Virus record (IMG/VR): IMGVR_UViG_3300029286_000009
Location: 186,001-250,000 of that record
DNA length: 64,000 nucleotides
Direction: 5' to 3' (one strand)
This document shows positions 27,274-61,865 of the stretch, piece after piece. The notes beneath the pieces were generated by a model that made no database searches, had not been told where the DNA came from, and worked only from the letters and a program-made list of their open reading frames with translations. Each line of letters opens with the position of its first letter. Positions within the stretch are counted from its first letter, which is position 1. The position numbers were made by a program, and so were the translations under genes.

Positions 27274-27603
27274 ATGGGAGATTTTTCACGGAATGTTGAC
27301 CCTGTGCCTCTTAATGGCGGGGTTTTAGTAAGGGTAGTAGGTAATAGCCAAATGACTACAGGTGGTATTTATCTACCTGAAACTGCATCTACCCGCCCAG
27401 TTCAAGGTGTAGTAGAGTGTGTAAGTCGCGGTTATTATGATCCATCCGGCTCATGGCTGGACCACGAGGTACACATAGGTGATGTAGTAATTTTCAATTG
27501 GAGGTCAGGTTTTGATTTAATCTTAGATGATGCGGAATATCGTATCATTCACGAACGCGACATTGTCGCAATACTAAAAGGAGCTAACTATGGCGAAGAA
27601 TGA
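27274..27603 (+). CDS. groES: Co-chaperonin GroES
   Basis: PL...VLV, TTGGIYLP mobile loop, V..GD.V.F, II.E.DI.A. Confidence 0.9.
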   Translation: MGDFSRNVDPVPLNGGVLVRVVGNSQMTTGGIYLPETASTRPVQGVVECVSRGYYDPSGSWLDHEVHIGDVVIFNWRSGFDLILDDAEYRIIHERDIVAILKGANYGEE

Positions 27604-27939: not shown

Positions 27940-28257
27940 TTGTCTAAAAAGGAAAAAGGAGAATTTTACATGAATTTTCAGTTTTTAGTAGAGAGTTGTG
28001 TATCAATGTTTAAGGGACAAGCAGTAACCAAAAAGATTGCGGAAGCCATTATTAGGAATGTTTTTGATGATATTTCTGATGGTATGGTAAGAGGTGAGAG
28101 TATTAATGTACGTGGCTTTGGTACCTTCAGTGTAACCGAAAAGAAGGGTCGTGCGTATGTTGAACCGCGTACGCAGTCAACGGTGTATGTAGATGCGAAG
28201 AACTATCCAAGATTTTCGGCGTCACCAGTGTTGAAGGATGCAGTAAAGGGAAGCTAA
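27940..28257 (+). CDS. HU/IHF-family DNA-binding protein; start probably 27970
   Basis: GESINVRGFGTF, EPRT, PRFSAS..LKDAV. Confidence 0.88.
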   Translation: MSKKEKGEFYMNFQFLVESCVSMFKGQAVTKKIAEAIIRNVFDDISDGMVRGESINVRGFGTFSVTEKKGRAYVEPRTQSTVYVDAKNYPRFSASPVLKDAVKGS

Positions 28258-28654
28258 AAGATGGACTTTTATAAAGCACAAGTGAAGGCTGTAAGTAAGG
28301 CAAAAGCACGAGAAATCTTAAAGAAGATGCAGGCACAAGGTATTGAGGAAATGCACCTCCCTGCTATTCCTCGTCGTGAGATCGGGTCATTTCTAATTGA
28401 TGAACGCCCCAATCTGTGGACTATTGAAGTTGACGGTGTTCCTTGCTTTGAAGTGATTTCGAATAAGATTGCGGCATCTGCTATGCTACGCATGTTGGAT
28501 GAGTGTGGTCAAGACAAAATAAATCTTGCTCCGCTTTGTCCGCAATTCTTGGAAGACTTTCTTGCAGATAAACGTAAGGACGTTATGGCGTTTGAAATTG
28601 CACATACAGATCCAGGGGAAGAGCTTCCTGGTCATGTGTAATCTGGGGTAAATT

Positions 28655-29098
28655 ATGGGTTATTTGGATGTTAAAGCACTGGTGGTCTCGCGGGAAAAGA
28701 TGGATATGGATGGATTTGCATTTTGTGCACGCAAGAGCAATTATAGGAACTACGATACCGAGACTGCCATAACTAATGTGATTAGTAAGATGCAAGGCAC
28801 TGATTATGGTGTGTGTATCTTATATGAGCAACCAGGAGACCAGCCTAACTTAGTAAGAGTAATAGACAGGATTAGGAACAACGTAAAGGCAAAACGAGTT
28901 CCTGTTGTAGTAGTAACAAATTTGCATGCAACAGAAACTGATATGGATAGTTACTATGAGGCGGGAGCTCAATTGGTAATACCTAAAATGGGTGATAGCC
29001 AATTAAAAATGTTACTATCAGTAGTGGCTAGTTTTAGTGAATTTGTAGCGAGATTTCCTGAAAAGATGCAATTCAGGAATTACGTTTCTAGTAGGTGA
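28655..29098 (+). CDS. Response-regulator receiver-like protein, degenerate
   Basis: RVPVVVVT...YEAGA...IPK pattern; no canonical phosphoacceptor Asp. Confidence 0.55.
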   Translation: MGYLDVKALVVSREKMDMDGFAFCARKSNYRNYDTETAITNVISKMQGTDYGVCILYEQPGDQPNLVRVIDRIRNNVKAKRVPVVVVTNLHATETDMDSYYEAGAQLVIPKMGDSQLKMLLSVVASFSEFVARFPEKMQFRNYVSSR

Positions 29099-29103
29099 AC
29101 GAC

Positions 29104-29621
29104 GGGGCACACAGGTATCGACAGACGTTATGAGTAGATTTGTATTGGTGGTCGGTGTGAGTGGTACCGTAAATCATTCGAATTATAAATGCCGAAGATA
29201 ATTCTTTCGACATGCTCTCAGCTTTTTGTGAAGCCGACCGTAAGGTTAGTGTAGCATACGCTGGTTAATAGGGCGGAGTTCCCAGTAACTTATCAACAGA
29301 AAACTGGGTGGCGGAGGCAAGTGGGTTTTATACCTGCTTCCTCTCCTGGTTACGAGGCTAAACTGACCTGGTGGAGGCACGCGGGAAACCGCGTCCCCTA
29401 AATCCTATGCAAGTAGGTATCCTAGTGTCAGGCATTAGGATAGAGATGGGTAGGGTAATCGCCACCGTGCGGGAAACCAAACCTTCTAGCCCGCAAAAGT
29501 CAGCGGCGGGGTCTCGAAAAGGCTGGCAAACTCTCTGTCGGGAGTATAAATATGGACTACACCATCTAAATTTACATTTCGAAAGGCGGACTGGATCTGG
29601 GTTCGACTCCCAGGTGCTCCA
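29104..29621 (+). ncRNA. ssrA: tmRNA
   Basis: Acceptor stem GGGGCAC/GTGCTCC-A with G3-U70; T-arm CTGGGTTCGACTCCCAG; 5' GGTATCGAC; resume context ATAAAT-GCC at 29191; tag ORF to 29268. Confidence 0.92.
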
Positions 29622-29898
29622 TAAAATTGTCTTATAACAAAGCATTGCTCCCGAAGACATACAAGATTTGTATAATAAACATTGTAATTGGGTCGATGTC
29701 AAAGGTTTTAGGCATCTCCGATCGCCAACTGCGACGTATCCGAAAGATGCATATTAGCTGATCTGCCATGTGTAGAAACAGTAAAGTTAACGTCAACAGT
29801 GCTAGGCGGGGCGTTGATGGTTGATACTAGTCTAGCGGGGGAATAGTTAACGTGACTGTTCCCCCATTTCATATGTAAAGAAGGTAAGGAGAGGTTAA

Positions 29899-31125
29899 AT
29901 GGCGGAAGTTTTGAGTCAAGAAGTAGTTGTATATCAAGAGCATATAGTGGATTTTTATGGAGACCAAATTATATCGATACAGGATGAAAATAATGATGTG
30001 TGGTCTCCTGTAAAGGGATTGTGTGGTGCGATTGGCATCAAAGGTGTCCAAGACCAGATTAACAAAATTAAAAATGACGGGGCCTTCAGATTCAAGGCTA
30101 GCCTTGTAACTGCCCTAGATGGTAAGAATTACTCAACTTTTTGTATTCACGCTGATGATATTCCGATGTGGTTAGCAACAATTGGTACCGGTCGCGTTGA
30201 TGAGAGTGTAAAAAGTAAGTTGATTCTATATAAGAGAGAGTGTGCTAATGTATTGCGGGACTACTGGACTAAGGGTGCTGCTGTAAATCCCCGTTTGGGT
30301 AATCTTGATGTAGACCAGATTAAGAACATTGTTAATGAAGCTCTACAGGTTGCATTGGACGAATACAGACAGGCTAGGACGCCTGAGGAAATTGCTCAAC
30401 TTATCTTTGAGCGAGACGTTGTTATTTTGGCTGAGACGGCGAACCGTGTAGAAAGTCCCTTTCGTGATTCTATTTACAGACGCATCGAAGTGCTTATGGA
30501 CAGTCGTTTTGGTAAACTAGAACCTGCTGAAGAAGCAGAATTAGTAAAGGGACTTACTCCTTTGACCGAGAGCCTATTCCGTAAGCTATATTTGGGGCAG
30601 GGTTGGTGCCGAGATAAACTAGCTCTTTATTTCCCTAAGGAACTGAGTAGCAAGACACAGTTTGACCAGCTCCTAAAGATGTGGGATATTCCAGCACCTA
30701 AAAGGCAGTCTAGAACTTCTATCGCTTTCGCCCGCCGACTTTTGCGAGAAAATCATGTTAATAAGAAGACCATAAATCAGTTGATTACTGAGTTCAATAG
30801 GTCGCGGGAGTCTATTTTGCGGGCTATCAGTGATCAATGGAATTCTTTGAACAAGTCTTTCAAGAAATATTGCACCGCAGGCATAATTCCTAAAGGCAGG
30901 GCTTACAGTGATTATATTGATAGGTCTCCACTTTGGGTAGCCAAGCGTGAAGCTTTTAAGGAGACTTTTGATAATACTTGTTTCTATTGTGGATACCAGT
31001 CCCCTACTGGTATTGCGGTACACCATCTAAACTATATCCGTAGCGGACAAGAACTACCAACAGATTTGGAAATTGTTTGTAACACTTGCCACCAGAAGCG
31101 GCACAAAGAGAAGTATAACGTGTAA
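29899..31125 (+). CDS. P22 antirepressor N-terminal domain plus C-terminal HNH protein
   Basis: V.FYGD.I, LC.AIGI, WL..I, L..YK.EC..VL.DYWTKG.A.NPR; CFYC...HHLNY...CNTCH. Confidence 0.82.
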   Translation: MAEVLSQEVVVYQEHIVDFYGDQIISIQDENNDVWSPVKGLCGAIGIKGVQDQINKIKNDGAFRFKASLVTALDGKNYSTFCIHADDIPMWLATIGTGRVDESVKSKLILYKRECANVLRDYWTKGAAVNPRLGNLDVDQIKNIVNEALQVALDEYRQARTPEEIAQLIFERDVVILAETANRVESPFRDSIYRRIEVLMDSRFGKLEPAEEAELVKGLTPLTESLFRKLYLGQGWCRDKLALYFPKELSSKTQFDQLLKMWDIPAPKRQSRTSIAFARRLLRENHVNKKTINQLITEFNRSRESILRAISDQWNSLNKSFKKYCTAGIIPKGRAYSDYIDRSPLWVAKREAFKETFDNTCFYCGYQSPTGIAVHHLNYIRSGQELPTDLEIVCNTCHQKRHKEKYNV

Positions 31126-31136
31126 GGGAAGGTATA

Positions 31137-31766
31137 ATGGACTTTGAAATAGAAGTTAGGTCAGCAGGTGAGCTTTGTGAGAAGCTTCGTAATGTTACGT
31201 TGAGGGGCAGTACAATACCCCCTTATTTGAATTCTTTTATTAGAATTGAAACCTTTAACCCCCGCAATTTATCACCGTGTCAGCGGTACGCTTTATTACC
31301 GGAGCTCAAGAAAATAGAGGAATTGCGGTGGGAAATTCTTAGAGAATACGGGCAAGACATTTTACAGCTAAATGGCTATCTGAAGTGTCACTACCCAGAT
31401 AAGACTATTGACATATTACCGCCGGTCTGTGAGGAGTATGTAACACCTTGGGGTGAGTTGAAAGCCATCATAAACGACGGGTTGCATCGGGTATTTTTAG
31501 CCTATCAGATGGGTATTCCTGTGAACGTTGCTTACATTAGGGGGGTGCATCCGGGTTACCCCTATTACGCGCATATGAATCCCAAAGGATTTGACGACAT
31601 TGAACTTATAGAGGAAATACCGGAGAATTATGTGAAGAAGTTTCATGTTGCCAAAAACCACAAAGAGCTTTTCAGAAATTTCAGTAGTAAATTTGAGAAC
31701 GTAGGGGACTCAAGACCTAGGAAACAAGAGACCTTCCCTGAGGAAGTTTTAAAGCTTTTGGGATAA
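31137..31766 (+). CDS. ParB/Srx-like domain protein
   Basis: IINDGLHR motif preceded by LPP. Confidence 0.45.
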   Translation: MDFEIEVRSAGELCEKLRNVTLRGSTIPPYLNSFIRIETFNPRNLSPCQRYALLPELKKIEELRWEILREYGQDILQLNGYLKCHYPDKTIDILPPVCEEYVTPWGELKAIINDGLHRVFLAYQMGIPVNVAYIRGVHPGYPYYAHMNPKGFDDIELIEEIPENYVKKFHVAKNHKELFRNFSSKFENVGDSRPRKQETFPEEVLKLLG

Positions 31767-36167: not shown

Positions 36168-37223
36168 ATGGAGCAAAATCAGGAATTACTTAAAGAAATA
36201 CCGGTATCTATTTCTTATCTTTCAGGAATCGGAGTCGATATTGGAACTAGCTTTCTTCAAGTAGCGAGAGAGAGAACAGATGGCAAGGTTGAGTTTGTGT
36301 CTGAAAGGGACGCTTTCTATGCGATTAAACCCACGTCGGCGGTATCCGCAAAATTTATTGAAAAATCTCTTGTTCAGAAGGGGGCTTTTGTCTTAAAATC
36401 TGATGGCATCTTTTATGTAGTGGGTAGAGAGGCGATTGCTACAGCGATAGAAAGGGGTGGCTCGGTGGAGAGACCACTAAAGAAGGGTGTCCTTAGTATG
36501 AAGGATAAAGATGCAATGGGAATGCTTGCGGTTTTGCTTAAGTCGCTTGTCAAAGAAGCTCAAACCCCAGGAGAAATATGTGTTTATTCCTATCCGGCTG
36601 ACCCGTTAGACCAGTCGTTTGATGTAGTATATCATCAACATAGGATGGGAGAAATTCTAGGTAAAATGGGGTATAAAGCTGTACCACTGTTGGAATCAGA
36701 AGCTTTAGCGTACAGTGAGCTTATGGATGAAGATTTAACCGGAATTGCGGTTTCATGCGGTGCTGGTATGTTTAATTTTGCGTGTTTTTCAGTTGGACAG
36801 TGTCTTCTTAGCTTCAGTATAGCCCAAGGTGGTGATTACATTGATAAATCTGTAGCTAAACCTCTAGACATTTCGGAGACCGAAGTGCAGGCGGAAAAGG
36901 AAAGTCCAACTATGGATTTGAATAATCCTAAAGGACAGATACAAGAAACTATAGTGATGTATTATGACAATTTAATCAAATATGTTTGTGATGTCTTAGA
37001 AAAGAAGATTGGGCAGTTCGATGAAATGCCTAAATTCACTAAGCCTATAACTATAGTTATATCTGGAGGCACTAGTCTTCCTAAGGGCTTTATGGAAAAG
37101 ATGTCTGTTGCACTTTTATCTAAAAATTTTCCATTTACGATTGGCAACATAAAACGTGCAGGAGATCCGCTCACGGCAGTTGCGAATGGTTGTTTAATAT
37201 TTTCTCAAATGATGAGAGAATAA
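36168..37223 (+). CDS. Actin-like (MreB/FtsA/ASKHA) ATPase
   Basis: GVDIGTS, E.EA.A, CGAG, GGDYID, ISGGTS, P..AVA.G. Confidence 0.85.
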   Translation: MEQNQELLKEIPVSISYLSGIGVDIGTSFLQVARERTDGKVEFVSERDAFYAIKPTSAVSAKFIEKSLVQKGAFVLKSDGIFYVVGREAIATAIERGGSVERPLKKGVLSMKDKDAMGMLAVLLKSLVKEAQTPGEICVYSYPADPLDQSFDVVYHQHRMGEILGKMGYKAVPLLESEALAYSELMDEDLTGIAVSCGAGMFNFACFSVGQCLLSFSIAQGGDYIDKSVAKPLDISETEVQAEKESPTMDLNNPKGQIQETIVMYYDNLIKYVCDVLEKKIGQFDEMPKFTKPITIVISGGTSLPKGFMEKMSVALLSKNFPFTIGNIKRAGDPLTAVANGCLIFSQMMRE

Positions 37224-37240: not shown

Positions 37241-38437
37241 ATGGAAAAAATGGGAAAGGAAATAGTAACAAAGGAATTTAATTTTATGGAAGACACTATT
37301 GTGGCGGTTGACCAAAACGATGTGTGGTATATTTCTCCACGACATATTTGTGAAAATGTAGGATTAGATTGGGCTTCTCAGAGTAGAAAAATTGAGAAGG
37401 AGTCTGAGAAGTTCAACCGTTGTCTTATGACAACAGTTGGTCACGATGGTAAACTGCGTGAAATGGTTATGATACCTGTGACACGTATAAATACATGGAT
37501 ATTGAGTATCAATGCAAAGCGTGTCAAAAACTTAAGAGTAAGAGCATATCTACGGAAATACCAAGATCAGCTATCCGATTGGTTGTATGAAGCGGGATTT
37601 CTAGGAGCGGCGGTAAATAAGGATGTGTTGTTACTCCCTGCGGAACGACAGGTGGAAGTATTGGGAGATGCTCTTCACAGAGCTCGCTTGCAAAGTGAAC
37701 CATTGAATGAGTATCAAGAGAAGATAGCGACCATTTTAGGTTTACCTGACTTAGAAGGGATGGATAAATATAAGACTCAGCGTCTGCAGATGTTGACAGA
37801 TGTTAAATTAGGTGTTGCTAGTCCTTTGTTCTCAAAAGGTTTGCGGGGAGTAGTAAGACTAACTGATGAACTATTTTACATCGCTTATATGATAGAAAGG
37901 TGGTGTGTTGATAAGCTGATTTGCTGTTTTCCACAAGACTTGCCCACGCCTGTGGCGATAGAGCAATATATAAGAGATAAAGGTTATTGTGAACCTTGGG
38001 TGGTTAAACCCATTAGGCACGCAGATGCACGAAGGGTGGTTAAGCTTAATACTCTGTTTAGCTATAGTATTTCTGATTTAATAATACGATTTAATAAACC
38101 AGCTGAATTGATACACAATGCTATGTTTAGAGTAGTAAAAGATATGGAGGATGTATTTACTGCGACTGAAGTTAAACTGGAACTTCCAGCCATAAGAGAC
38201 AGAGCCAGTATGTCAGCTAGGCGGGAGCAGTATATGAAAACGGCTGAGTGGTGGGATAAGCGAAACGCTTTTTTCAAAGTTTTCAATTGTTGTGTAGTTT
38301 GTGGGGATATGGAGGTTGCATCTTCGCGATTTGAGGCACACCACTTGCACTATGATACATTAGGATTTGAGTCACCTTGGGATTTAGTGCCCTTGTGTAA
38401 AGATTGTCATACTAAGGTAGAAGGAAGGAGTAGGTGA
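37241..38437 (+). CDS. P22 antirepressor N-terminal domain plus C-terminal HNH protein
   Basis: ICENVGLDWASQ..K, DGKLREM, WILSIN..RVK; CVVC...HHLHY...LCKDCH. Confidence 0.82.
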   Translation: MEKMGKEIVTKEFNFMEDTIVAVDQNDVWYISPRHICENVGLDWASQSRKIEKESEKFNRCLMTTVGHDGKLREMVMIPVTRINTWILSINAKRVKNLRVRAYLRKYQDQLSDWLYEAGFLGAAVNKDVLLLPAERQVEVLGDALHRARLQSEPLNEYQEKIATILGLPDLEGMDKYKTQRLQMLTDVKLGVASPLFSKGLRGVVRLTDELFYIAYMIERWCVDKLICCFPQDLPTPVAIEQYIRDKGYCEPWVVKPIRHADARRVVKLNTLFSYSISDLIIRFNKPAELIHNAMFRVVKDMEDVFTATEVKLELPAIRDRASMSARREQYMKTAEWWDKRNAFFKVFNCCVVCGDMEVASSRFEAHHLHYDTLGFESPWDLVPLCKDCHTKVEGRSR

Positions 38438-38992: not shown

Positions 38993-39226
38993 GTCAACCA
39001 CCCCACGCCTAAAGGCGGGGGCTTGAAAGAGCCTTGGTTGACTAGGGGGCATTAATTTGCAGCAGTTGAGAACCAGAAATACATACACACCCCAAAATAT
39101 TCCGCACGTTTCGGGCGACTGTGGTTGGACATTAAAAGTCCTGGTGGGTAGGGACGGTGTGTCCAGCTTAAAAACGGTTTCCAACAATCCCGATGCGGTC
39201 CCAACCTCAGAAAAGAGGAGCGAAAC
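38993..39226 (+). ncRNA. omega-RNA (HEARO-like) scaffold
   Basis: About 230-nt structured leader of iscB with GTCAACC/GGTTGAC closing stem. Confidence 0.8.
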
Positions 39227-40435
39227 TTGAGAGTATTTGTTAAAAATCAAAAAGGTAATCCATTAATGCCGACTACTCCAAGAGGAGCAAGAGTGCTTCT
39301 CTGTGCAGGGAAAGCGGTAGTGGTTAAACGAACACCGTTCACTATCCAACTCACAGCAGCAACTGGCGAGACAAAACAGCCTGTCGTCTTAGGTGTAGAC
39401 AGCGGCTTCACTCACGTCGGTTTATCTGCGGTATCAGACAGGGCTGAATTGTATGCGGCAGAAGTCTTATTACGCACCGACATGGTTAAGCTCAATGCCG
39501 AACGAGCAATGTATCGACGTAACAGGCGAAGTCGCAAGACATGGTACCGTCAACCGAGGTTCCTTAATAGGTCGAAACCGAAGGGTTGGTTGGCACCTAG
39601 TATTCAGCACAAACTAGACTCACATAAGAAGTTGATCGACAAGGTAAAAGGACTGCTGCCAATCACCAAGGTTGTTATTGAGGTTGCCGCATTTGATATT
39701 CAGAAGATTAAAAATCCTGAGATATTCGGCGAAGGCTACCAGAATGGTGAGCAGTCCGGTTTTTGGAATGTCAGGGAGTATGTATTTCACAGGGACAGCC
39801 ACAAGTGCCAAGCTCCAAAGTGTAATCATAAAGACAAAATACTTAACGTCCATCATGTTGTTAGCCGGCAGACAGGCGGTGATAGACCCCATAATCTAAT
39901 TACACTTTGTGAAACCTGTCACAAGAGTCACCATAAAAAAGCACTAGACCTTAAGATCAATGCGGGAAACGGATTCAAAGCAGAAACGTTCATGTCAATG
40001 GTAAGGTGGAGATTAACTCAGGACACAGGCTCACAACACACATTTGGTTATATCACAAAAACAAATCGCATTGCTGCACGTTTAGAGAAGTCTCATATCA
40101 ACGATGCTTTCATTATTGCAGGTGGTGGACAGAATCGGACCACAGCATTAACGATCAAACAAGTAAGAAAGTGCAATCGCAAACTATACAAAGGCAGCCG
40201 AAGCCACATCAGGAATACTGCCCCACGTGAAATATTAGGTTATCGACGCTTCGATAAGGTGAAGTGGGGTCGTGTTGAAGCCTTTATTTTCGGAAGACGA
40301 TCCACTGGCAATTTCGATATCAGGGACGGCAACGGGAAAAGTCTCCACAAATCTATTAACGCAAAACACATTAGGTTGCTGGAAAGAGCTTCAACAAGCT
40401 TGATTTCCAGAACCTCACTTCCTCCCCAGTGCTAA
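39227..40435 (+). CDS. iscB: IscB RNA-guided nuclease
   Basis: PLMP, RuvC-I GVDSG, RRNRRSRK bridge helix, IEVAAFD, HNH (VHH...N...CETCH), SHINDA. Confidence 0.95.
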   Translation: MRVFVKNQKGNPLMPTTPRGARVLLCAGKAVVVKRTPFTIQLTAATGETKQPVVLGVDSGFTHVGLSAVSDRAELYAAEVLLRTDMVKLNAERAMYRRNRRSRKTWYRQPRFLNRSKPKGWLAPSIQHKLDSHKKLIDKVKGLLPITKVVIEVAAFDIQKIKNPEIFGEGYQNGEQSGFWNVREYVFHRDSHKCQAPKCNHKDKILNVHHVVSRQTGGDRPHNLITLCETCHKSHHKKALDLKINAGNGFKAETFMSMVRWRLTQDTGSQHTFGYITKTNRIAARLEKSHINDAFIIAGGGQNRTTALTIKQVRKCNRKLYKGSRSHIRNTAPREILGYRRFDKVKWGRVEAFIFGRRSTGNFDIRDGNGKSLHKSINAKHIRLLERASTSLISRTSLPPQC

Positions 40436-60622: not shown

Positions 60623-61865
60623 CGAAATTCCTTGGTTTAAAGCCCCCGAATTTATTCGTGGGCTTTCATGAAAAACACGGAATCATTTAACTTCCTTTGT
60701 GTCAAAATATAGTAGGTGCGTAAAATATGAGAAAGTCTTTTCAATACAGGATTTATCCAACTAAGAAGCAACAAACATTGCTGCTAAATACCCTTGAGCA
60801 ATGCAGGCGGTTGTATAATCATCTGCTGGAACAGCGTAAAAATAGTTGGGAACAATTCCATAAAGGGCTTTCTCTCTATGACCAACAAGCAACCTTTCCT
60901 ACACTGAAAGAACGCGTTCCTGAACTTAAAGACATTCATTCTCAAGTTTTGCAAAATGTAGCCGTCAGAATAGACCTTGCATTTAAGGCTTTCTTCCGCA
61001 GAGTGAAACAAGGTGTCGATCCCGGATATCCTCGGTTTCGTGGATTCGGTAGATATGACTCCTTCACATACCCTCAAACTGGATTCAGACTCAACGAAAA
61101 ATCCGTAAGTCTTTCCAAAATTGGGAAAGTAAAAGCAGTAATTCATAGACCAACTGAAGGGACAATCAAGACTTGTACCATTAGAAAAACTGCAACTCAG
61201 AAATGGTTTATCTCTTTCTCTTGCGAAGTAGATAGAAATATTCTCCCTGACAATACTGTCTCTGTTGGGCTTGACGCAGGACTCTCTTCGTTCATGACAC
61301 TCTCTAATGGTGAAAAGGTTGATAACCCTCGTTTCTTTAAACAAGAGGCTAAAAATCTTGCAAAGGTTCAACGCAGACTTTCCAAACAAACCAAAGGAAC
61401 CCGTAAGAGGCACAAGTGTCGCAAGATAGTTTCTCGCGTTCATGAGCGAATCACGAACAAGAGAAAAGATTTTGCTCACAAGCTGTCTCGTAAACTCATA
61501 GACGCCTATGGTGTGATAGCTATTGAAGACCTGTCCATCAATAATATGCAAAAAGATAACTTTCGCTGCATTAACCGTGGAATAGCAGACGTGGCTTGGC
61601 GAAATTTCTTTGATATGCTGGTCTACAAGGCAGAATGCGCCGGTAGAATAGTAATCAAAGTCAATCCCGCCTACACTAGCCAAATTTGCTCACATTGTGG
61701 ATATCGTCAAAAGATTCCATTATCAACTAGAGTTTTTAAGTGCCCATGTTGTAATTTCGAAATTGATAGAGATGTTAATGCTGCGATAAATATTCTCAGT
61801 CTGGGGCTACAGACTGTTGGCTCTGCCAAAGAAGCCCCCCGCCTTTAGGCGTGGGGAATAGTCAC
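60623..61865 (+). mobile_element. IS200/IS605-family TnpB-only element
   Basis: Follows TTAC (60619-60622); left hairpin near 60640-60665; right hairpin GAAGCCCCCCGCCTTTAGGCGTGGGG ending in TCAC. Confidence 0.8.
60727..61848 (+). CDS. tnpB: TnpB RNA-guided nuclease
   Basis: YRIYPT HTH, GYPRF, GLDAG, IEDL, TSQICS.CG, DRDVNAA.NI. Confidence 0.95.
   Translation: MRKSFQYRIYPTKKQQTLLLNTLEQCRRLYNHLLEQRKNSWEQFHKGLSLYDQQATFPTLKERVPELKDIHSQVLQNVAVRIDLAFKAFFRRVKQGVDPGYPRFRGFGRYDSFTYPQTGFRLNEKSVSLSKIGKVKAVIHRPTEGTIKTCTIRKTATQKWFISFSCEVDRNILPDNTVSVGLDAGLSSFMTLSNGEKVDNPRFFKQEAKNLAKVQRRLSKQTKGTRKRHKCRKIVSRVHERITNKRKDFAHKLSRKLIDAYGVIAIEDLSINNMQKDNFRCINRGIADVAWRNFFDMLVYKAECAGRIVIKVNPAYTSQICSHCGYRQKIPLSTRVFKCPCCNFEIDRDVNAAINILSLGLQTVGSAKEAPRL

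What the first reader, a model, noticed from the sequence alone, without database searches (positions are those of the whole stretch)
29104..29621. Oversized phage tmRNA (518 nt) with a 25-aa non-canonical tag
Seen: complete tRNA-Ala-like domain (G3-U70, CCA not encoded); tag frame 29191-29268 reads AEDNSFDMLSAFCEADRKVSVAYAG followed by TAA TAG; about 350 nt of hairpin-rich sequence follows the tag. Established: typical tmRNAs are about 350-400 nt with tags near 10 aa ending in AA, which ClpX recognises. Inference: roughly 150 extra nucleotides form added domains, and the YAG ending may redirect or avoid host proteolysis. No smpB is in the window.
Basis: partly seen in the sequence, partly recalled or inferred. 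Interest (0 to 1): 0.7.

Follow-up and report, generated by a model that had tools for sequence, protein, structure and literature searches.

The report
Oversized jumbo-phage tmRNA, long tag
A 260-kb freshwater phage carries a genuine but unusually large ribosome-rescue RNA (tmRNA) that belongs to a previously undescribed phage-only lineage whose members all encode a 24-26-residue tag, some enlarged by an extra structured RNA domain.

Summary
ARAGORN and Rfam RF00023 (61.9 bits, cut-off 47) both place a one-piece tmRNA at 29104-29621. The window comes from a 259.7-kb IMG/VR phage with no tRNAs and no SmpB.

The tmRNA is not a one-off. Eight other full-length homologues sit at the same syntenic position (GroES-HU-two small ORFs-tmRNA-ParB_CE-clamp loader...terminase) in related huge phages. 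They are 372-588 nt long, and all encode 24-26-aa acidic tags in the same frame. The tag bodies are conserved; the C-termini vary (LAA, VAA, ATA, AAV, LAS, ASV, YAG).

The excess length has two sources: a tag ORF about 45 nt longer than usual, and a 129-nt structured insert (29400-29528) in the pseudoknot ring. Seven relatives, three known only from 3' halves, carry an insert at the same site (two subtypes). Four lack it.

Phage tmRNAs and long non-LAA tags are both known, so this is a new variant of a known kind. The host is unknown. Function of the insert and fate of tagged proteins remain inferences.

The parts
29104..29621 (+). Complete one-piece (standard-form) tmRNA gene, 518 nt to the discriminator A; CCA not encoded
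   Evidence: ARAGORN; Rfam RF00023 61.9 bits, above GA 47, model 1-374; eight full-length syntenic homologues
29104..29110 (+). 5' strand of acceptor stem P1 (GGGGCAC); G3 pairs with U70 (29618), the alanine identity pair
   Evidence: Pairs with 29614-29620 (GUGCUCC). P1 has 4 of 7 pairs with compensatory changes across 9 members, and G3.U70 is present in all 9
29153..29179 (+). Pseudoknot PK1 (S1 tmRNA 50-53/63-66; S2 56-62/70-76); ends 11 nt before the resume codon
   Evidence: Both stems are kept through compensatory changes in the family. The spacing to the resume codon is read from the sequence
29191..29265 (+). Tag reading frame, 25 codons: AEDNSFDMLSAFCEADRKVSVAYAG (resume codon GCC at 29191)
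   Evidence: The Rfam alignment places the consensus resume GCA on this GCC. The frame is open in all 9 members, and the other two frames carry stops in all but one case. Synonymous codon changes occur between members, for example 11 synonymous against 13 non-synonymous for L267/L268
29266..29271 (+). Tandem stop codons TAA TAG
   Evidence: Read from the sequence
29276..29308 (+). Pseudoknot PK2 (S1 tmRNA 173-177/184-188; S2 CCCAGU 178-183 / ACUGGG 200-205)
   Evidence: Compensatory changes: CCCAGU/ACUGGG, CCCAAU/AUUGGG and GCUAAU/AUUAGC
29336..29401 (+). ARAGORN's proposed 'tag' (ASSPGYEAKLTWWRHAGNRVP); not a tag but part of the third pseudoknot and GAAA-loop hairpin region
   Evidence: ARAGORN itself says 'Tag not identified'. 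The aligned frame in G003 stops after 5 codons. The region lies about 157 nt downstream of PK1
29380..29393 (+). Hairpin CGCGG-GAAA-CCGCG that immediately precedes the insert
   Evidence: Stem CGCG/CGCG against CGUA/UACG in relatives
29400..29528 (+). 129-nt insert (expansion domain, subtype A) in the pseudoknot ring. It includes hairpin a (29404-29417) and hairpin b (29418-29442), then a 3' module containing GCGGGAAACC
   Evidence: Absent from L265, L267, L268 and L271. Present at the same site in G001 and L266 (subtype A) and in G003, G004, L273, L272 and L274 (subtype B). alifold: 27 pairs with 6 compensatory in A; 22 pairs with 5 compensatory in B. MFE -46.1 kcal/mol, z = -2.83
29533..29544 (+). 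Last hairpin of the ring (CUCUC-UG-..GGGAG), followed by UAUAAAU and the 3' strand of P2
   Evidence: Conserved block CTCTCTGTCGGGAGTATAAA
29597..29613 (+). T-arm (CUGGG / UUCGACU / CCCAG)
   Evidence: 4 of 5 pairs have compensatory changes across the family
28261..29098 (+). Context only: two small ORFs (126 aa and 147 aa) always found just upstream. ORF147 ends 5 nt before the tmRNA, which implies co-transcription
   Evidence: Synteny. ORF147 has a CheY-like receiver pattern. The ORF126 model has pLDDT 85.7 and no PDB match. Neither is SmpB-like

Best explanation
This is a functional, phage-encoded, standard one-piece tmRNA. It belongs to a lineage that has been inherited and diversified within a clade of huge phages.

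How it most likely works:
- It is probably co-transcribed with the upstream GroES-HU-ORF126-ORF147 genes.
- Its ends are trimmed like a tRNA's, and host enzymes add the CCA.
- Host AlaRS charges it with alanine through the G3.U70 pair.
- Host SmpB and EF-Tu deliver it to stalled ribosomes, since the phage has no smpB.
- Translation resumes at GCC 29191 and adds a 25-residue acidic tag (26 residues counting the alanine the charged tmRNA delivers), ending at TAA TAG.

The excess size has two sources:
- The lineage-typical long tag ORF.
- A 129-nt structured expansion at 29400-29528, inserted between the GAAA-loop hairpin and the last hairpin of the pseudoknot ring. This part of tmRNA is known to vary in pseudoknot number and to tolerate change. 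The expansion most likely arose by duplication and divergence of neighbouring ring modules. It most likely acts as a tolerated or stabilising expansion segment, not as a new catalytic or coding element.

Shown: the gene, its conserved helices, the reading frame, the location and foldedness of the insert, and the absence of smpB.
Inferred: expression, processing, charging, use of host SmpB, the fate of tagged proteins, and the role of the insert.
For: - Detection by two independent methods at the same coordinates.
- Nine full-length homologues at one syntenic site, in phages whose terminases are 47-61% identical.
- Compensatory base changes in P1, P2a, upper P2, both stems of PK1, both stems of PK2, the GAAA hairpin and the T-arm. 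G3.U70 is invariant.
- The Rfam alignment puts the consensus resume codon on GCC 29191, and PK1 ends 11 nt upstream.
- The tag frame is open in 9 of 9 members, while the other frames carry stops.
- Differences between tags are enriched at third codon positions and include many synonymous changes: L267/L273 7 synonymous against 6 non-synonymous, L267/L268 11 against 13.
- The insert lies at one identical site in 8 members, 3 of them known only from 3' halves. It has compensatory pairs and a folding z-score of -2.83.
- Short direct repeats link the insert to the preceding hairpin (GCGGGAAACC twice in the window, with an analogous pair in G003). L265 carries a tandem duplicate of the terminal hairpin.
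- No SmpB in this phage or in four relatives, two of them at least 97% complete.
- The sequence is identical in independent samples.
- Literature: phages are known to carry tmRNA (PMC7162821, PMC4131195, PMC9004378).
Against: - There are no expression data; no RNA-seq run was listed. Transcription, processing, charging and tagging are all inferred.
- The host is unknown, so compatibility with host SmpB and AlaRS is assumed.
- The Rfam score is low (61.9 bits, against 112-199 for sampled bacterial tmRNAs). The Rfam model misses two family members outright, which shows strong divergence.
- G001's T-loop is atypical.
- The fold of the 3' half of the insert is not resolved. Folding z-scores for subtype B are not significant (-0.6 and -0.8), although pseudoknots are not modelled there.
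- The duplication evidence rests on 10-11-nt repeats, which can arise by chance.
- The variable, often non-AA C-termini mean that canonical ClpXP targeting cannot be assumed.
Confidence: 0.78

Rival explanations
1. The tag is a phage-specific degron or handle. Proteins tagged by the phage tmRNA would be routed to phage-encoded machinery, namely the phage's own Clp/Hsp100-type ATPase and ClpP-family protease, or would be shielded from host ClpXP. This would create an orthogonal quality-control or amino-acid-recycling pathway during infection.
For: - The tag body is conserved (A-E-x-S-h-x-D-x-h-L-..-E-x-D-R pattern, net charge -1 to -5) while the C-terminus is not: YAG, LAA, ATA, AAV, VAA, LAS, ASV. 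That is the reverse of the sampled bacterial tags, which end in LAA, MAA or FAA.
- The phage encodes a 701-aa AAA_2/ClpB_D2-small ATPase and a ClpP-family protein. The ATPase is shared with relatives G001 and G002.
- There is precedent for a long tag read by a different protease: the Mesoplasma tag and Lon (PMC9382460).
Against: - There is no evidence of any interaction.
- The ClpP-family protein also matches the ClpP-related head-maturation protease model (NF045542, 57 bits, below that model's cut-off of 120), so it may be a capsid protease.
- The ATPase also occurs in G002, which carries a different, short-tag tmRNA. It was not found in G004 (86% complete), which has the family tmRNA.
- Several members keep canonical ALAA or VAA ends.
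Confidence: 0.12
2. The 129-nt insert is an intervening sequence or a small mobile or self-cleaving element. It would be removed, or would cut the RNA, leaving a mature tmRNA of normal size or in two pieces.
For: - Presence and absence are patchy even among close relatives. L265 has the most similar tag but lacks the insert.
- The authors of the tmRNA database note that introns outside the T-loop may have been systematically missed (PMC11915505).
- Homing-endonuclease genes and IscB/TnpB elements are active in this genome region.
Against: - No Rfam family (group I or II intron, or any ribozyme) matches 29000-29750 even at E up to 5.
- 129 nt is far below the size of known group I introns in tmRNA, where the smallest intron-form gene is 545 bp (PMC11915505).
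- The T-loop is intact.
- The insert site lies in the ring, where pseudoknot number is naturally variable.
- The insert shares sequence motifs with the adjacent tmRNA modules.
- No joints appeared in DNA contigs.
Confidence: 0.07
3. It is a recent copy of the host's own tmRNA. The size and the long tag would then be host features, not phage features.
For: - Phage tmRNAs often resemble those of host lineages (PMC9004378).
- The host is unknown, and only a small fraction of bacterial diversity could be sampled.
Against: - The gene sits at the same syntenic site across a phage clade with 47-61% terminase identity, and it has diverged in step with that clade.
- A covariance model of the family's PK1-tag-PK2 module found no genuine tmRNA in about 150 genomes each of Planctomycetota, Bacillota and Bacteroidota.
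- 151 Verrucomicrobiota tmRNAs were 345-404 nt. The 30 examined had tags of 8-16 aa.
Confidence: 0.08
4. It is a decoy that titrates host SmpB and inhibits host trans-translation, like the TLD-only tmRNA of mycobacteriophage DS6A, and does not tag proteins productively.
For: - There is no phage smpB, so it must compete for host SmpB.
- The DS6A precedent (PMC4131195, PMC11915505).
Against: - A complete mRNA-like domain is present, with PK1, the resume context and an ORF kept open in 9 of 9 members.
- The codon-position-biased substitution pattern indicates selection on the peptide.
Confidence: 0.04

Closest known systems
Standard one-piece bacterial tmRNA (Rfam RF00023; SsrA)
   Same: - Acceptor stem with G3.U70, T-arm, long P2 helix.
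- PK1 ending 11 nt before a GCN resume codon.
- Tag ORF with stop codons, followed by a ring of pseudoknots and hairpins.
- Passes the Rfam gathering score.
   Different: - 518 nt, against about 345-404 nt in the sampled bacteria.
- A 25-aa acidic tag ending YAG, against the commonest 10-aa tag (PMC11915505) and the 8-16-aa tags ending LAA, MAA or FAA in the sample.
- An extra 129-nt domain in the ring.
- Much lower model score: 61.9 bits against 112-199.
- Encoded by a phage without smpB.
Previously reported phage tmRNAs: mycobacteriophages Bxz1, Cali, Catera and others, Bacillus phage G, huge phages, Melnitz (PMC4131195, PMC7162821, PMC9004378)
   Same: A complete ssrA carried by large phages. 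It is thought to maintain the hijacked translation machinery or to tag proteins.
   Different: - No sequence similarity to any of 50,697 deposited phage genomes (blastn).
- Melnitz has a two-piece, riboswitch-controlled form.
- DS6A has the tRNA-like domain only.
- Some huge phages also carry SmpB.
- Here the tmRNA is a one-piece lineage with a clade-wide 24-26-aa tag and variable expansion domains.
Mollicute (Mesoplasma/Mycoplasma) tmRNA tags read by Lon (PMC9382460)
   Same: A tag much longer than the E. coli tag that does not end in LAA. This shows that tag length and terminus track the protease that reads them.
   Different: - No sequence similarity.
- The phage tags are acidic, and their C-termini vary between close relatives.
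- No Lon is encoded by the phage.
Intron-form tmRNA genes (group I intron in the T-loop) and permuted two-piece tmRNA genes (PMC11915505)
   Same: These are the other known routes to tmRNA genes longer than 500 bp.
   Different: - The T-loop here is intact and no intron model matches.
- Gene order is standard; RF04321 (permuted) scores 16 bits against a cut-off of 47.
- The extra sequence lies in the pseudoknot ring.
Lineage-specific variation in tmRNA pseudoknot number, for example the tandem replacement of pk4 in cyanobacteria (own knowledge; 'variable number of pseudoknots', PMC1168896)
   Same: Extra structured modules within the PK2-PK4 ring, plausibly produced by duplication.
   Different: - The size of the addition (129 nt here; G001 reaches 588 nt in total).
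- Its presence or absence differs among closely related genomes.

Membership tests
tmRNA, standard one-piece form (RF00023) | Covariance-model score at or above the curated gathering score | tested here: met
   61.9 bits against 47, full model 1-374, E = 9e-22
tmRNA, standard one-piece form (RF00023) | tRNA-like domain: 7-bp acceptor stem with G3.U70, discriminator A, T-arm with a 7-nt T-loop, no anticodon arm | tested here: met
   GGGGCAC/GUGCUCC with G3.U70; CUGGG-UUCGACU-CCCAG. Both helices covary across 9 members
tmRNA, standard one-piece form (RF00023) | Long helix P2 joining the tRNA-like domain to the rest of the molecule | tested here: met
   P2a (tmRNA 19-21/488-490) pairs in 9 of 9 members with changes on both sides. 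Upper P2 (44-49/458-464) has 5 compensatory pairs
tmRNA, standard one-piece form (RF00023) | PK1 just upstream of the resume codon, and a tag ORF beginning with GCN (Ala) and ending in stop codon(s) | tested here: met
   PK1 at tmRNA 50-76, both stems covarying. GCC at position 88, 11 nt after PK1. 25 codons, then TAA TAG. The frame is open in all 9 members
tmRNA, standard one-piece form (RF00023) | Ring of further pseudoknots (typically PK2-PK4) after the tag | tested here: met
   PK2 is supported by compensatory changes. Further hairpins and a pseudoknot follow. The ring is expanded, not reduced, and the exact fold of its later part is unresolved
tmRNA, standard one-piece form (RF00023) | Proteolysis tag ending in hydrophobic residues plus Ala-Ala (ClpXP degron) | tested here: not met
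   The window tag ends ...VAYAG. Relatives end LAA, VAA, ATA, AAV, LAS or ASV. This is a common property of tmRNA tags, not a strict requirement of the family (compare Mollicutes, PMC9382460)
tmRNA, standard one-piece form (RF00023) | Works with SmpB; alanylated; performs trans-translation | not testable with these tools
   No smpB in the phage or in four relatives. The upstream ORFs are not SmpB-like. Host SmpB is presumed, and biochemistry is needed
Intron-form tmRNA gene | Group I intron interrupting the T-loop | tested here: not met
   The T-loop UUCGACU is intact. No intron or ribozyme family reaches E of 5 or better in 29000-29750
Permuted (two-piece) tmRNA gene | Circularly permuted order, with the 3' acceptor part before the 5' part | tested here: not met
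   Standard order. RF04321 gives only 16.2 bits against a cut-off of 47
TLD-only phage tmRNA decoy (DS6A type) | tRNA-like domain without an mRNA-like domain | tested here: not met
   A full mRNA-like domain and tag ORF are present

The most novel reading that the evidence does not exclude
The phage lineage has evolved its own trans-translation 'dialect':
- A conserved 24-26-residue acidic tag whose body, not its C-terminus, is the recognition element. It would be read by phage-encoded machinery, with the phage's Clp/Hsp100-type ATPase and ClpP-family protease as candidates. Rescued polypeptides would thereby be uncoupled from host ClpXP during infection.
- An expansion domain in the tmRNA ring that serves as a docking platform for a phage or host factor.
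Probability: 0.1. Interest if true: 0.8.

Novelty: new variant of a known kind. Interest (0 to 1): 0.45.

Why it matters
- **Origin of phage tmRNAs.** They are usually treated as borrowed host genes. Here a tmRNA has been kept at one genomic position through deep divergence of a huge-phage clade, which argues that it matters to the phage.
- **Which part of the tag is under selection.** The conserved part of the tag is the opposite of the bacterial pattern, which raises the testable idea that the tag is read differently during infection.
- **How much the ring tolerates.** The family gives a natural series, 372 to 588 nt, with and without the insert among close relatives. That series could be used to ask how much extra RNA the tmRNA pseudoknot ring tolerates on the ribosome.
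- **Annotation.** ARAGORN mis-called the tag here and missed two of the four relatives' tmRNAs it was run on. Rfam RF00023 missed two family members. Phage surveys based on these tools will undercount and mis-annotate such genes.
- **Synthetic biology.** Long orthogonal tags are also useful as degrons.

Tried and rejected
- **ARAGORN's tag (window 29336-29401).** Rejected. ARAGORN flags 'Tag not identified', the frame is not conserved in G003, it lies far from PK1, and it overlaps conserved helices.
- **Hidden SmpB in the two conserved upstream ORFs.** Rejected. ORF147 has a CheY-like beta-alpha pattern and a weak Response_reg hit. ORF126 folds confidently (pLDDT 85.7) into an alpha/beta repeat with no PDB match better than E = 0.17, and nothing SmpB-like. 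Both ORFs also occur in L269, which lacks the tmRNA.
- **Known intron or ribozyme in the insert.** No Rfam hit.
- **Amphipathic-helix tag.** Hydrophobic moments are not clearly above shuffles (fractions 0.03-0.41), so this is not claimed.
- **Host identification, all routes failed:**
  - The acceptor plus T-arm pattern scan of genome-contig hit only tRNA-like sites.
  - Named IscB homologues are scattered across phyla at 62-65% identity.
  - The terminase has only 23-26% identity to Bacillus, Clostridium and Microcystis phages.
  - Family model R1 found no genuine tmRNA in three phylum samples. The tool scored only 18 candidates per genome, so this negative is weak.
- **Metagenome scan with the clamp-loader alignment.** Swamped by bacterial DnaX and wasted.
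- **Pattern CTCTGTCGGGAGTATAAA in IMG/VR.** Gave two chance hits, L182 and L183.
- **RNA-seq evidence.** No run was listed.
- **Population variants.** Contigs from X5-X8 were identical to the window, so they gave no covariation.
- **Blastn against deposited phages.** No match.
- **Complex prediction.** Not used, because no protein-protein binding is claimed.
Full report

Yes. ARAGORN finds one RNA gene in the 64-kb window, a tmRNA at 29104-29621 on the + strand. Rfam's tmRNA model RF00023 matches 29104-29624 over its whole length at 61.9 bits, above the gathering score of 47.

The sequence shows:
- an acceptor stem GGGGCAC/GUGCUCC with the G3.U70 pair;
- a discriminator A followed by TAA, so no encoded CCA;
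- a T-arm CUGGG-UUCGACU-CCCAG;
- from GCC at 29191, 25 sense codons reading AEDNSFDMLSAFCEADRKVSVAYAG, then TAA TAG.

The window is positions 186001-250000 of a 259,732-bp IMG/VR virus record. CheckV puts it at 96% complete, and it has 42% G+C. It has terminase, portal and capsid genes. It has no tRNA genes at all and no SmpB. It comes from lake and freshwater metagenomes.

An identical copy of the locus is in a second IMG/VR record. Contig pieces from four further runs cover parts of the region with no differences, and in X5 they include the insert. So this is not an assembly artefact.

**2. Which tag?**

ARAGORN proposes a different tag, ASSPGYEAKLTWWRHAGNRVP at tmRNA positions 233-298, but itself reports 'Tag not identified'.
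- The Rfam alignment places the consensus resume codon GCA on GCC 29191, after the A-rich stretch UAUAAAU.
- PK1, the pseudoknot that sets the frame in known tmRNAs, ends 11 nt upstream. Both of its stems are kept by compensatory changes in relatives.
- In all nine family members this frame is open for 24-26 codons and then stops. The other two frames carry stops in every member, apart from one frame in G001.
- Differences between related tags are enriched at third codon positions and include many synonymous codons: L267/L273 7 synonymous against 6 non-synonymous, and L267/L268 11 against 13. That is the signature of selection on a translated peptide.

ARAGORN's frame is closed after five codons in the aligned G003 sequence. 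It also overlaps conserved helices.

**3. It is one member of a phage tmRNA lineage**

The terminase has relatives of 47-61% identity on contigs of up to several hundred kb. Whole-record scans and neighbour-gene look-ups recovered tmRNAs at the same syntenic position in these phages. The gene order is GroES, (HNH), HU, ORF of about 126 aa, ORF of about 147 aa, tmRNA, ParB-CE, (YAcAr), DnaX-like clamp loader, and on to the terminase.

Full-length members:

| Member | Length (nt) | Tag |
|---|---|---|
| window | 518 | AEDNSFDMLSAFCEADRKVSVAYAG |
| L265 | 398 | AEDSILDMLVAFCDDNREGVTALAA |
| G004 | 504 | AEDYSILDAVLYCVEQDRSGVKLAS |
| G001 | 588 | AENSIFDTVLSYLEQDKRDSLTFASV |
| L271 | 372 | GETKLSDLVLGCVEQDREVKFATA |
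| G003 | 500 | AEKSMTEIILESVDHFNGSLAATA |
| L273 | 515 | AEKSMTDIILESVEDLRSGSLTAAV |
| L267 | 390 | AEKSMTDIILESVESLRSGAVAVAA |
| L268 | 386 | AKKSFSDIVLESVAYFENTSSHVAA |

Further points:
- Three more contigs (L266, L272, L274) hold 3' halves.
- Several contigs whose DNA could not be fetched show a gene-free gap of 490-670 nt at the same place.
- One relative (L269) lacks the gene at this site.
- G002 carries an unrelated-looking, canonical 346-nt tmRNA elsewhere, next to a tRNA-Lys.
- Two family members were invisible to RF00023: G004 and G001, the latter with an atypical T-loop. They were found only through a family-specific sequence pattern and synteny.
- ARAGORN missed G003 and G002.

The long tag is therefore a trait of the lineage, and the window's size is mid-range within it. 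The tags are all net acidic (-1 to -5) and share a conserved body, roughly A-E-x-S-h-x-D-x-h-L-x-x-h-E-x-D-R, where h is a hydrophobic residue. The last residues differ freely: YAG, LAA, LAS, ASV, ATA, AAV, VAA.

This is the reverse of the bacterial pattern. In 30 Verrucomicrobiota tmRNAs examined here, the tags were 8-16 aa and ended in LAA, MAA or FAA. A claim that the tag body forms an amphipathic helix was tested and is not supported statistically.

**4. Where the extra length is**

Alignment of long and short members places a single large insertion between the hairpin CGCGG-GAAA-CCGCG (followed by UCCCC) and the last ring hairpin CUCUC..GGGAG. In the window this is 29400-29528 (129 nt, 53% G+C).

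Inserts at this exact site fall into two sequence subtypes:
- Subtype A: window, G001, L266.
- Subtype B: G003, G004, L273, L272, L274.

Both subtypes share a CG(G/C)GAAAC motif. L265, L267, L268 and L271 lack the insert. L265 instead has a 30-nt tandem duplicate of the terminal hairpin. G001 carries a further expansion inside the GAAA hairpin.

Evidence that the insert is structured:
- In subtype A, two 5' hairpins are supported by compensatory changes. UAUCCUA/UAGGAUA in the window corresponds to UAUUCCAG/CUGGAAUA in the relatives, and the closing helix GAGAU..GUCUC corresponds to GGGAU..GUCCC.
- In subtype B, GUGGG/CCCAC changes to GUAGG/CCUAC in G004, and a UUCG-loop hairpin is replaced by a GCAA-loop hairpin.
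- alifold predicts 27 pairs with 6 compensatory for A, and 22 pairs with 5 compensatory for B.
- The window insert folds to -46.1 kcal/mol, with z = -2.83 against 200 dinucleotide shuffles.

Limits:
- The 3' half probably forms a pseudoknot, but with three to five sequences per subtype its fold is not settled.
- z-scores for subtype B are not significant under a pseudoknot-free model.

Short direct repeats link the insert to the module before it: GCGGGAAACC at 29381-29390 and 29469-29478, with an analogous pair in G003. This hints at an origin by internal duplication, but it is weak evidence. No Rfam family, intron or ribozyme included, matches the region even at E up to 5.

The rest of the excess length is the tag ORF: 75 nt, against about 30 nt for a 10-aa tag.

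**5. Is the core intact?**

Yes. Across the nine members, compensatory changes support P1, P2a, upper P2, both stems of PK1, both stems of PK2, the GAAA hairpin and the T-arm. G3.U70 is present in all nine. Together with the conserved ORF, this is what a gene under selection for trans-translation looks like. It is not what a decaying pseudogene, or an attP-type fragment of a host ssrA, would look like.

**6. Partners and context**

- No SmpB domain is found in this phage or in G001-G004, of which G001 (100%) and G002 (97%) are essentially complete.
- The two conserved ORFs just upstream were examined as possible divergent SmpBs and rejected.
- ORF147 ends 5 nt before the tmRNA, and no promoter-like site on the + strand was found. 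Co-transcription followed by tRNA-type processing is therefore the likely route; this is an inference.
- The phage encodes a ClpP-family protein and a 701-aa single-ring Clp/Hsp100-type ATPase outside the window. It encodes no Lon or SspB.
- The ATPase is shared with G001 and G002.
- These genes allow, but do not show, a phage-specific fate for tagged proteins.

**7. Host, and 'host tmRNAs with the same size and tag'**

The host could not be identified.
- A covariance model of the family-specific PK1-tag-PK2 module (R1) found no genuine tmRNA in about 150 genomes each of Planctomycetota, Bacillota and Bacteroidota. The weak hits it did return are not tmRNAs.
- In 151 Verrucomicrobiota genomes, the full-length matches were about 345-404 nt and scored 112-199 bits.

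These are samples, and the tool's prefilter scored few candidates per genome. The correct statement is 'not found in those searched'. The conserved synteny and divergence within the phage clade argue for long residence in phages and against recent capture from a host.

**8. Comparison with what is known**

- Phage tmRNAs are established. Examples are the mycobacteriophages of the Bxz1 group and Bacillus phage G (PMC4131195) and huge phages (PMC7162821). About 2.3% of deposited phage genomes carry one (PMC9004378).
- Long tags not ending in LAA are known in Mollicutes, where Lon reads them (PMC9382460).
- tmRNA genes over 500 bp are known as intron-form or permuted genes. The 2025 database paper used a 500-bp size cut-off, together with a score cut-off, to exclude all non-intron forms; its smallest intron form is 545 bp and its commonest tag length is 10 aa (PMC11915505). 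The window's gene is neither intron-form nor permuted.
- No deposited phage genome has a similar sequence.

I therefore class this as a new variant of a known kind. It is a phage-resident tmRNA lineage with a long tag conserved in its body and variable at its C-terminus, and with gain or loss of a large ring expansion. At 500-588 nt, its long members sit at or beyond the usual upper size of standard-form tmRNAs.

**9. Verdict**

| Question | Verdict |
|---|---|
| Observation | Confirmed |
| Best explanation | Functional phage tmRNA that uses host SmpB, with a tolerated or stabilising ring expansion |
| Confidence in best explanation | About 0.78 |
| Role of the insert and meaning of the YAG end | Open |
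| Interest | Moderate (0.45) |

Noticed in passing
window 38993-39205 and 39227-40435: A HEARO (omega) RNA (Rfam 111 bits, cut-off 83) lies directly upstream of an IscB gene (RRXRR + HNH). This is an RNA-guided nuclease element inside a jumbo phage. Its closest homologues (75-77% identity) are unnamed metagenomic proteins.
   Followed up: partly
window 29899-31125 and 37241-38437: Two genes with a P22_AR_N/Ant-like N-terminus and an HNH nuclease C-terminus. Both are absent from the otherwise syntenic G003 region, so they look like mobile homing-endonuclease insertions. One sits immediately downstream of the tmRNA.
   Followed up: partly
window 60727-61848: An IS605-family OrfB/TnpB-type transposase gene (phrog_506, E = 3e-116) within the phage's structural-gene region.
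   Followed up: no
window 28261-28641 and 28655-29098: Two small ORFs are conserved just upstream of the tmRNA across the clade. ORF147 resembles a CheY-like receiver domain. ORF126 has an internal repeat, a confident AlphaFold model (pLDDT 85.7) and no significant PDB match. Function is unknown, and both also occur where the tmRNA is absent (L269).
   Followed up: yes
G000:C1:85381-87486 (+) and about 107100-107810 (-), outside the window: The phage encodes a 701-aa Clp/Hsp100-type ATPase: a single AAA_2 module plus ClpB_D2-small, with an N-terminal region of about 300 aa that matches nothing. It also encodes a ClpP-family protease. The ATPase is 50% identical in G001 and 37% in G002.
   Followed up: partly
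L276:1630-2217 (-) = G001; L275:5522-6025 = G004; L175 = G003; L174 = G002: Standard tools miss or mis-annotate these phage tmRNAs. RF00023 found nothing in G001 and G004, ARAGORN found nothing in G003 and G002, and ARAGORN mis-called the window's tag. G001's tmRNA is 588 nt with an atypical T-loop (GGCAGUA).
   Followed up: yes
L174:1401-1476 and 1501-1846 (G002): A related 256-kb phage carries a different, canonical-looking 346-nt tmRNA (116.8 bits) next to a tRNA-Lys, at a non-syntenic position. This suggests independent acquisition or replacement within the clade.
   Followed up: partly
window 27274-27603, 27940-28257, 31137-31766, 36168-37223: The phage encodes GroES (Cpn10), an HU-type DNA-binding protein, a ParB-CE domain protein and an actin-like protein. 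The relatives' orthologues of the last one carry Volactin/MreB Pfam hits.
   Followed up: no
window 29309-29325 / 29369-29385 and 29381-29390 / 29469-29478; L265:653-662 / 683-692: Short direct repeats occur within the tmRNA ring, including an exact 10-mer shared by the pre-insert hairpin and the insert. L265 has a tandem duplicate of the terminal hairpin. Both suggest the ring grows by module duplication.
   Followed up: partly
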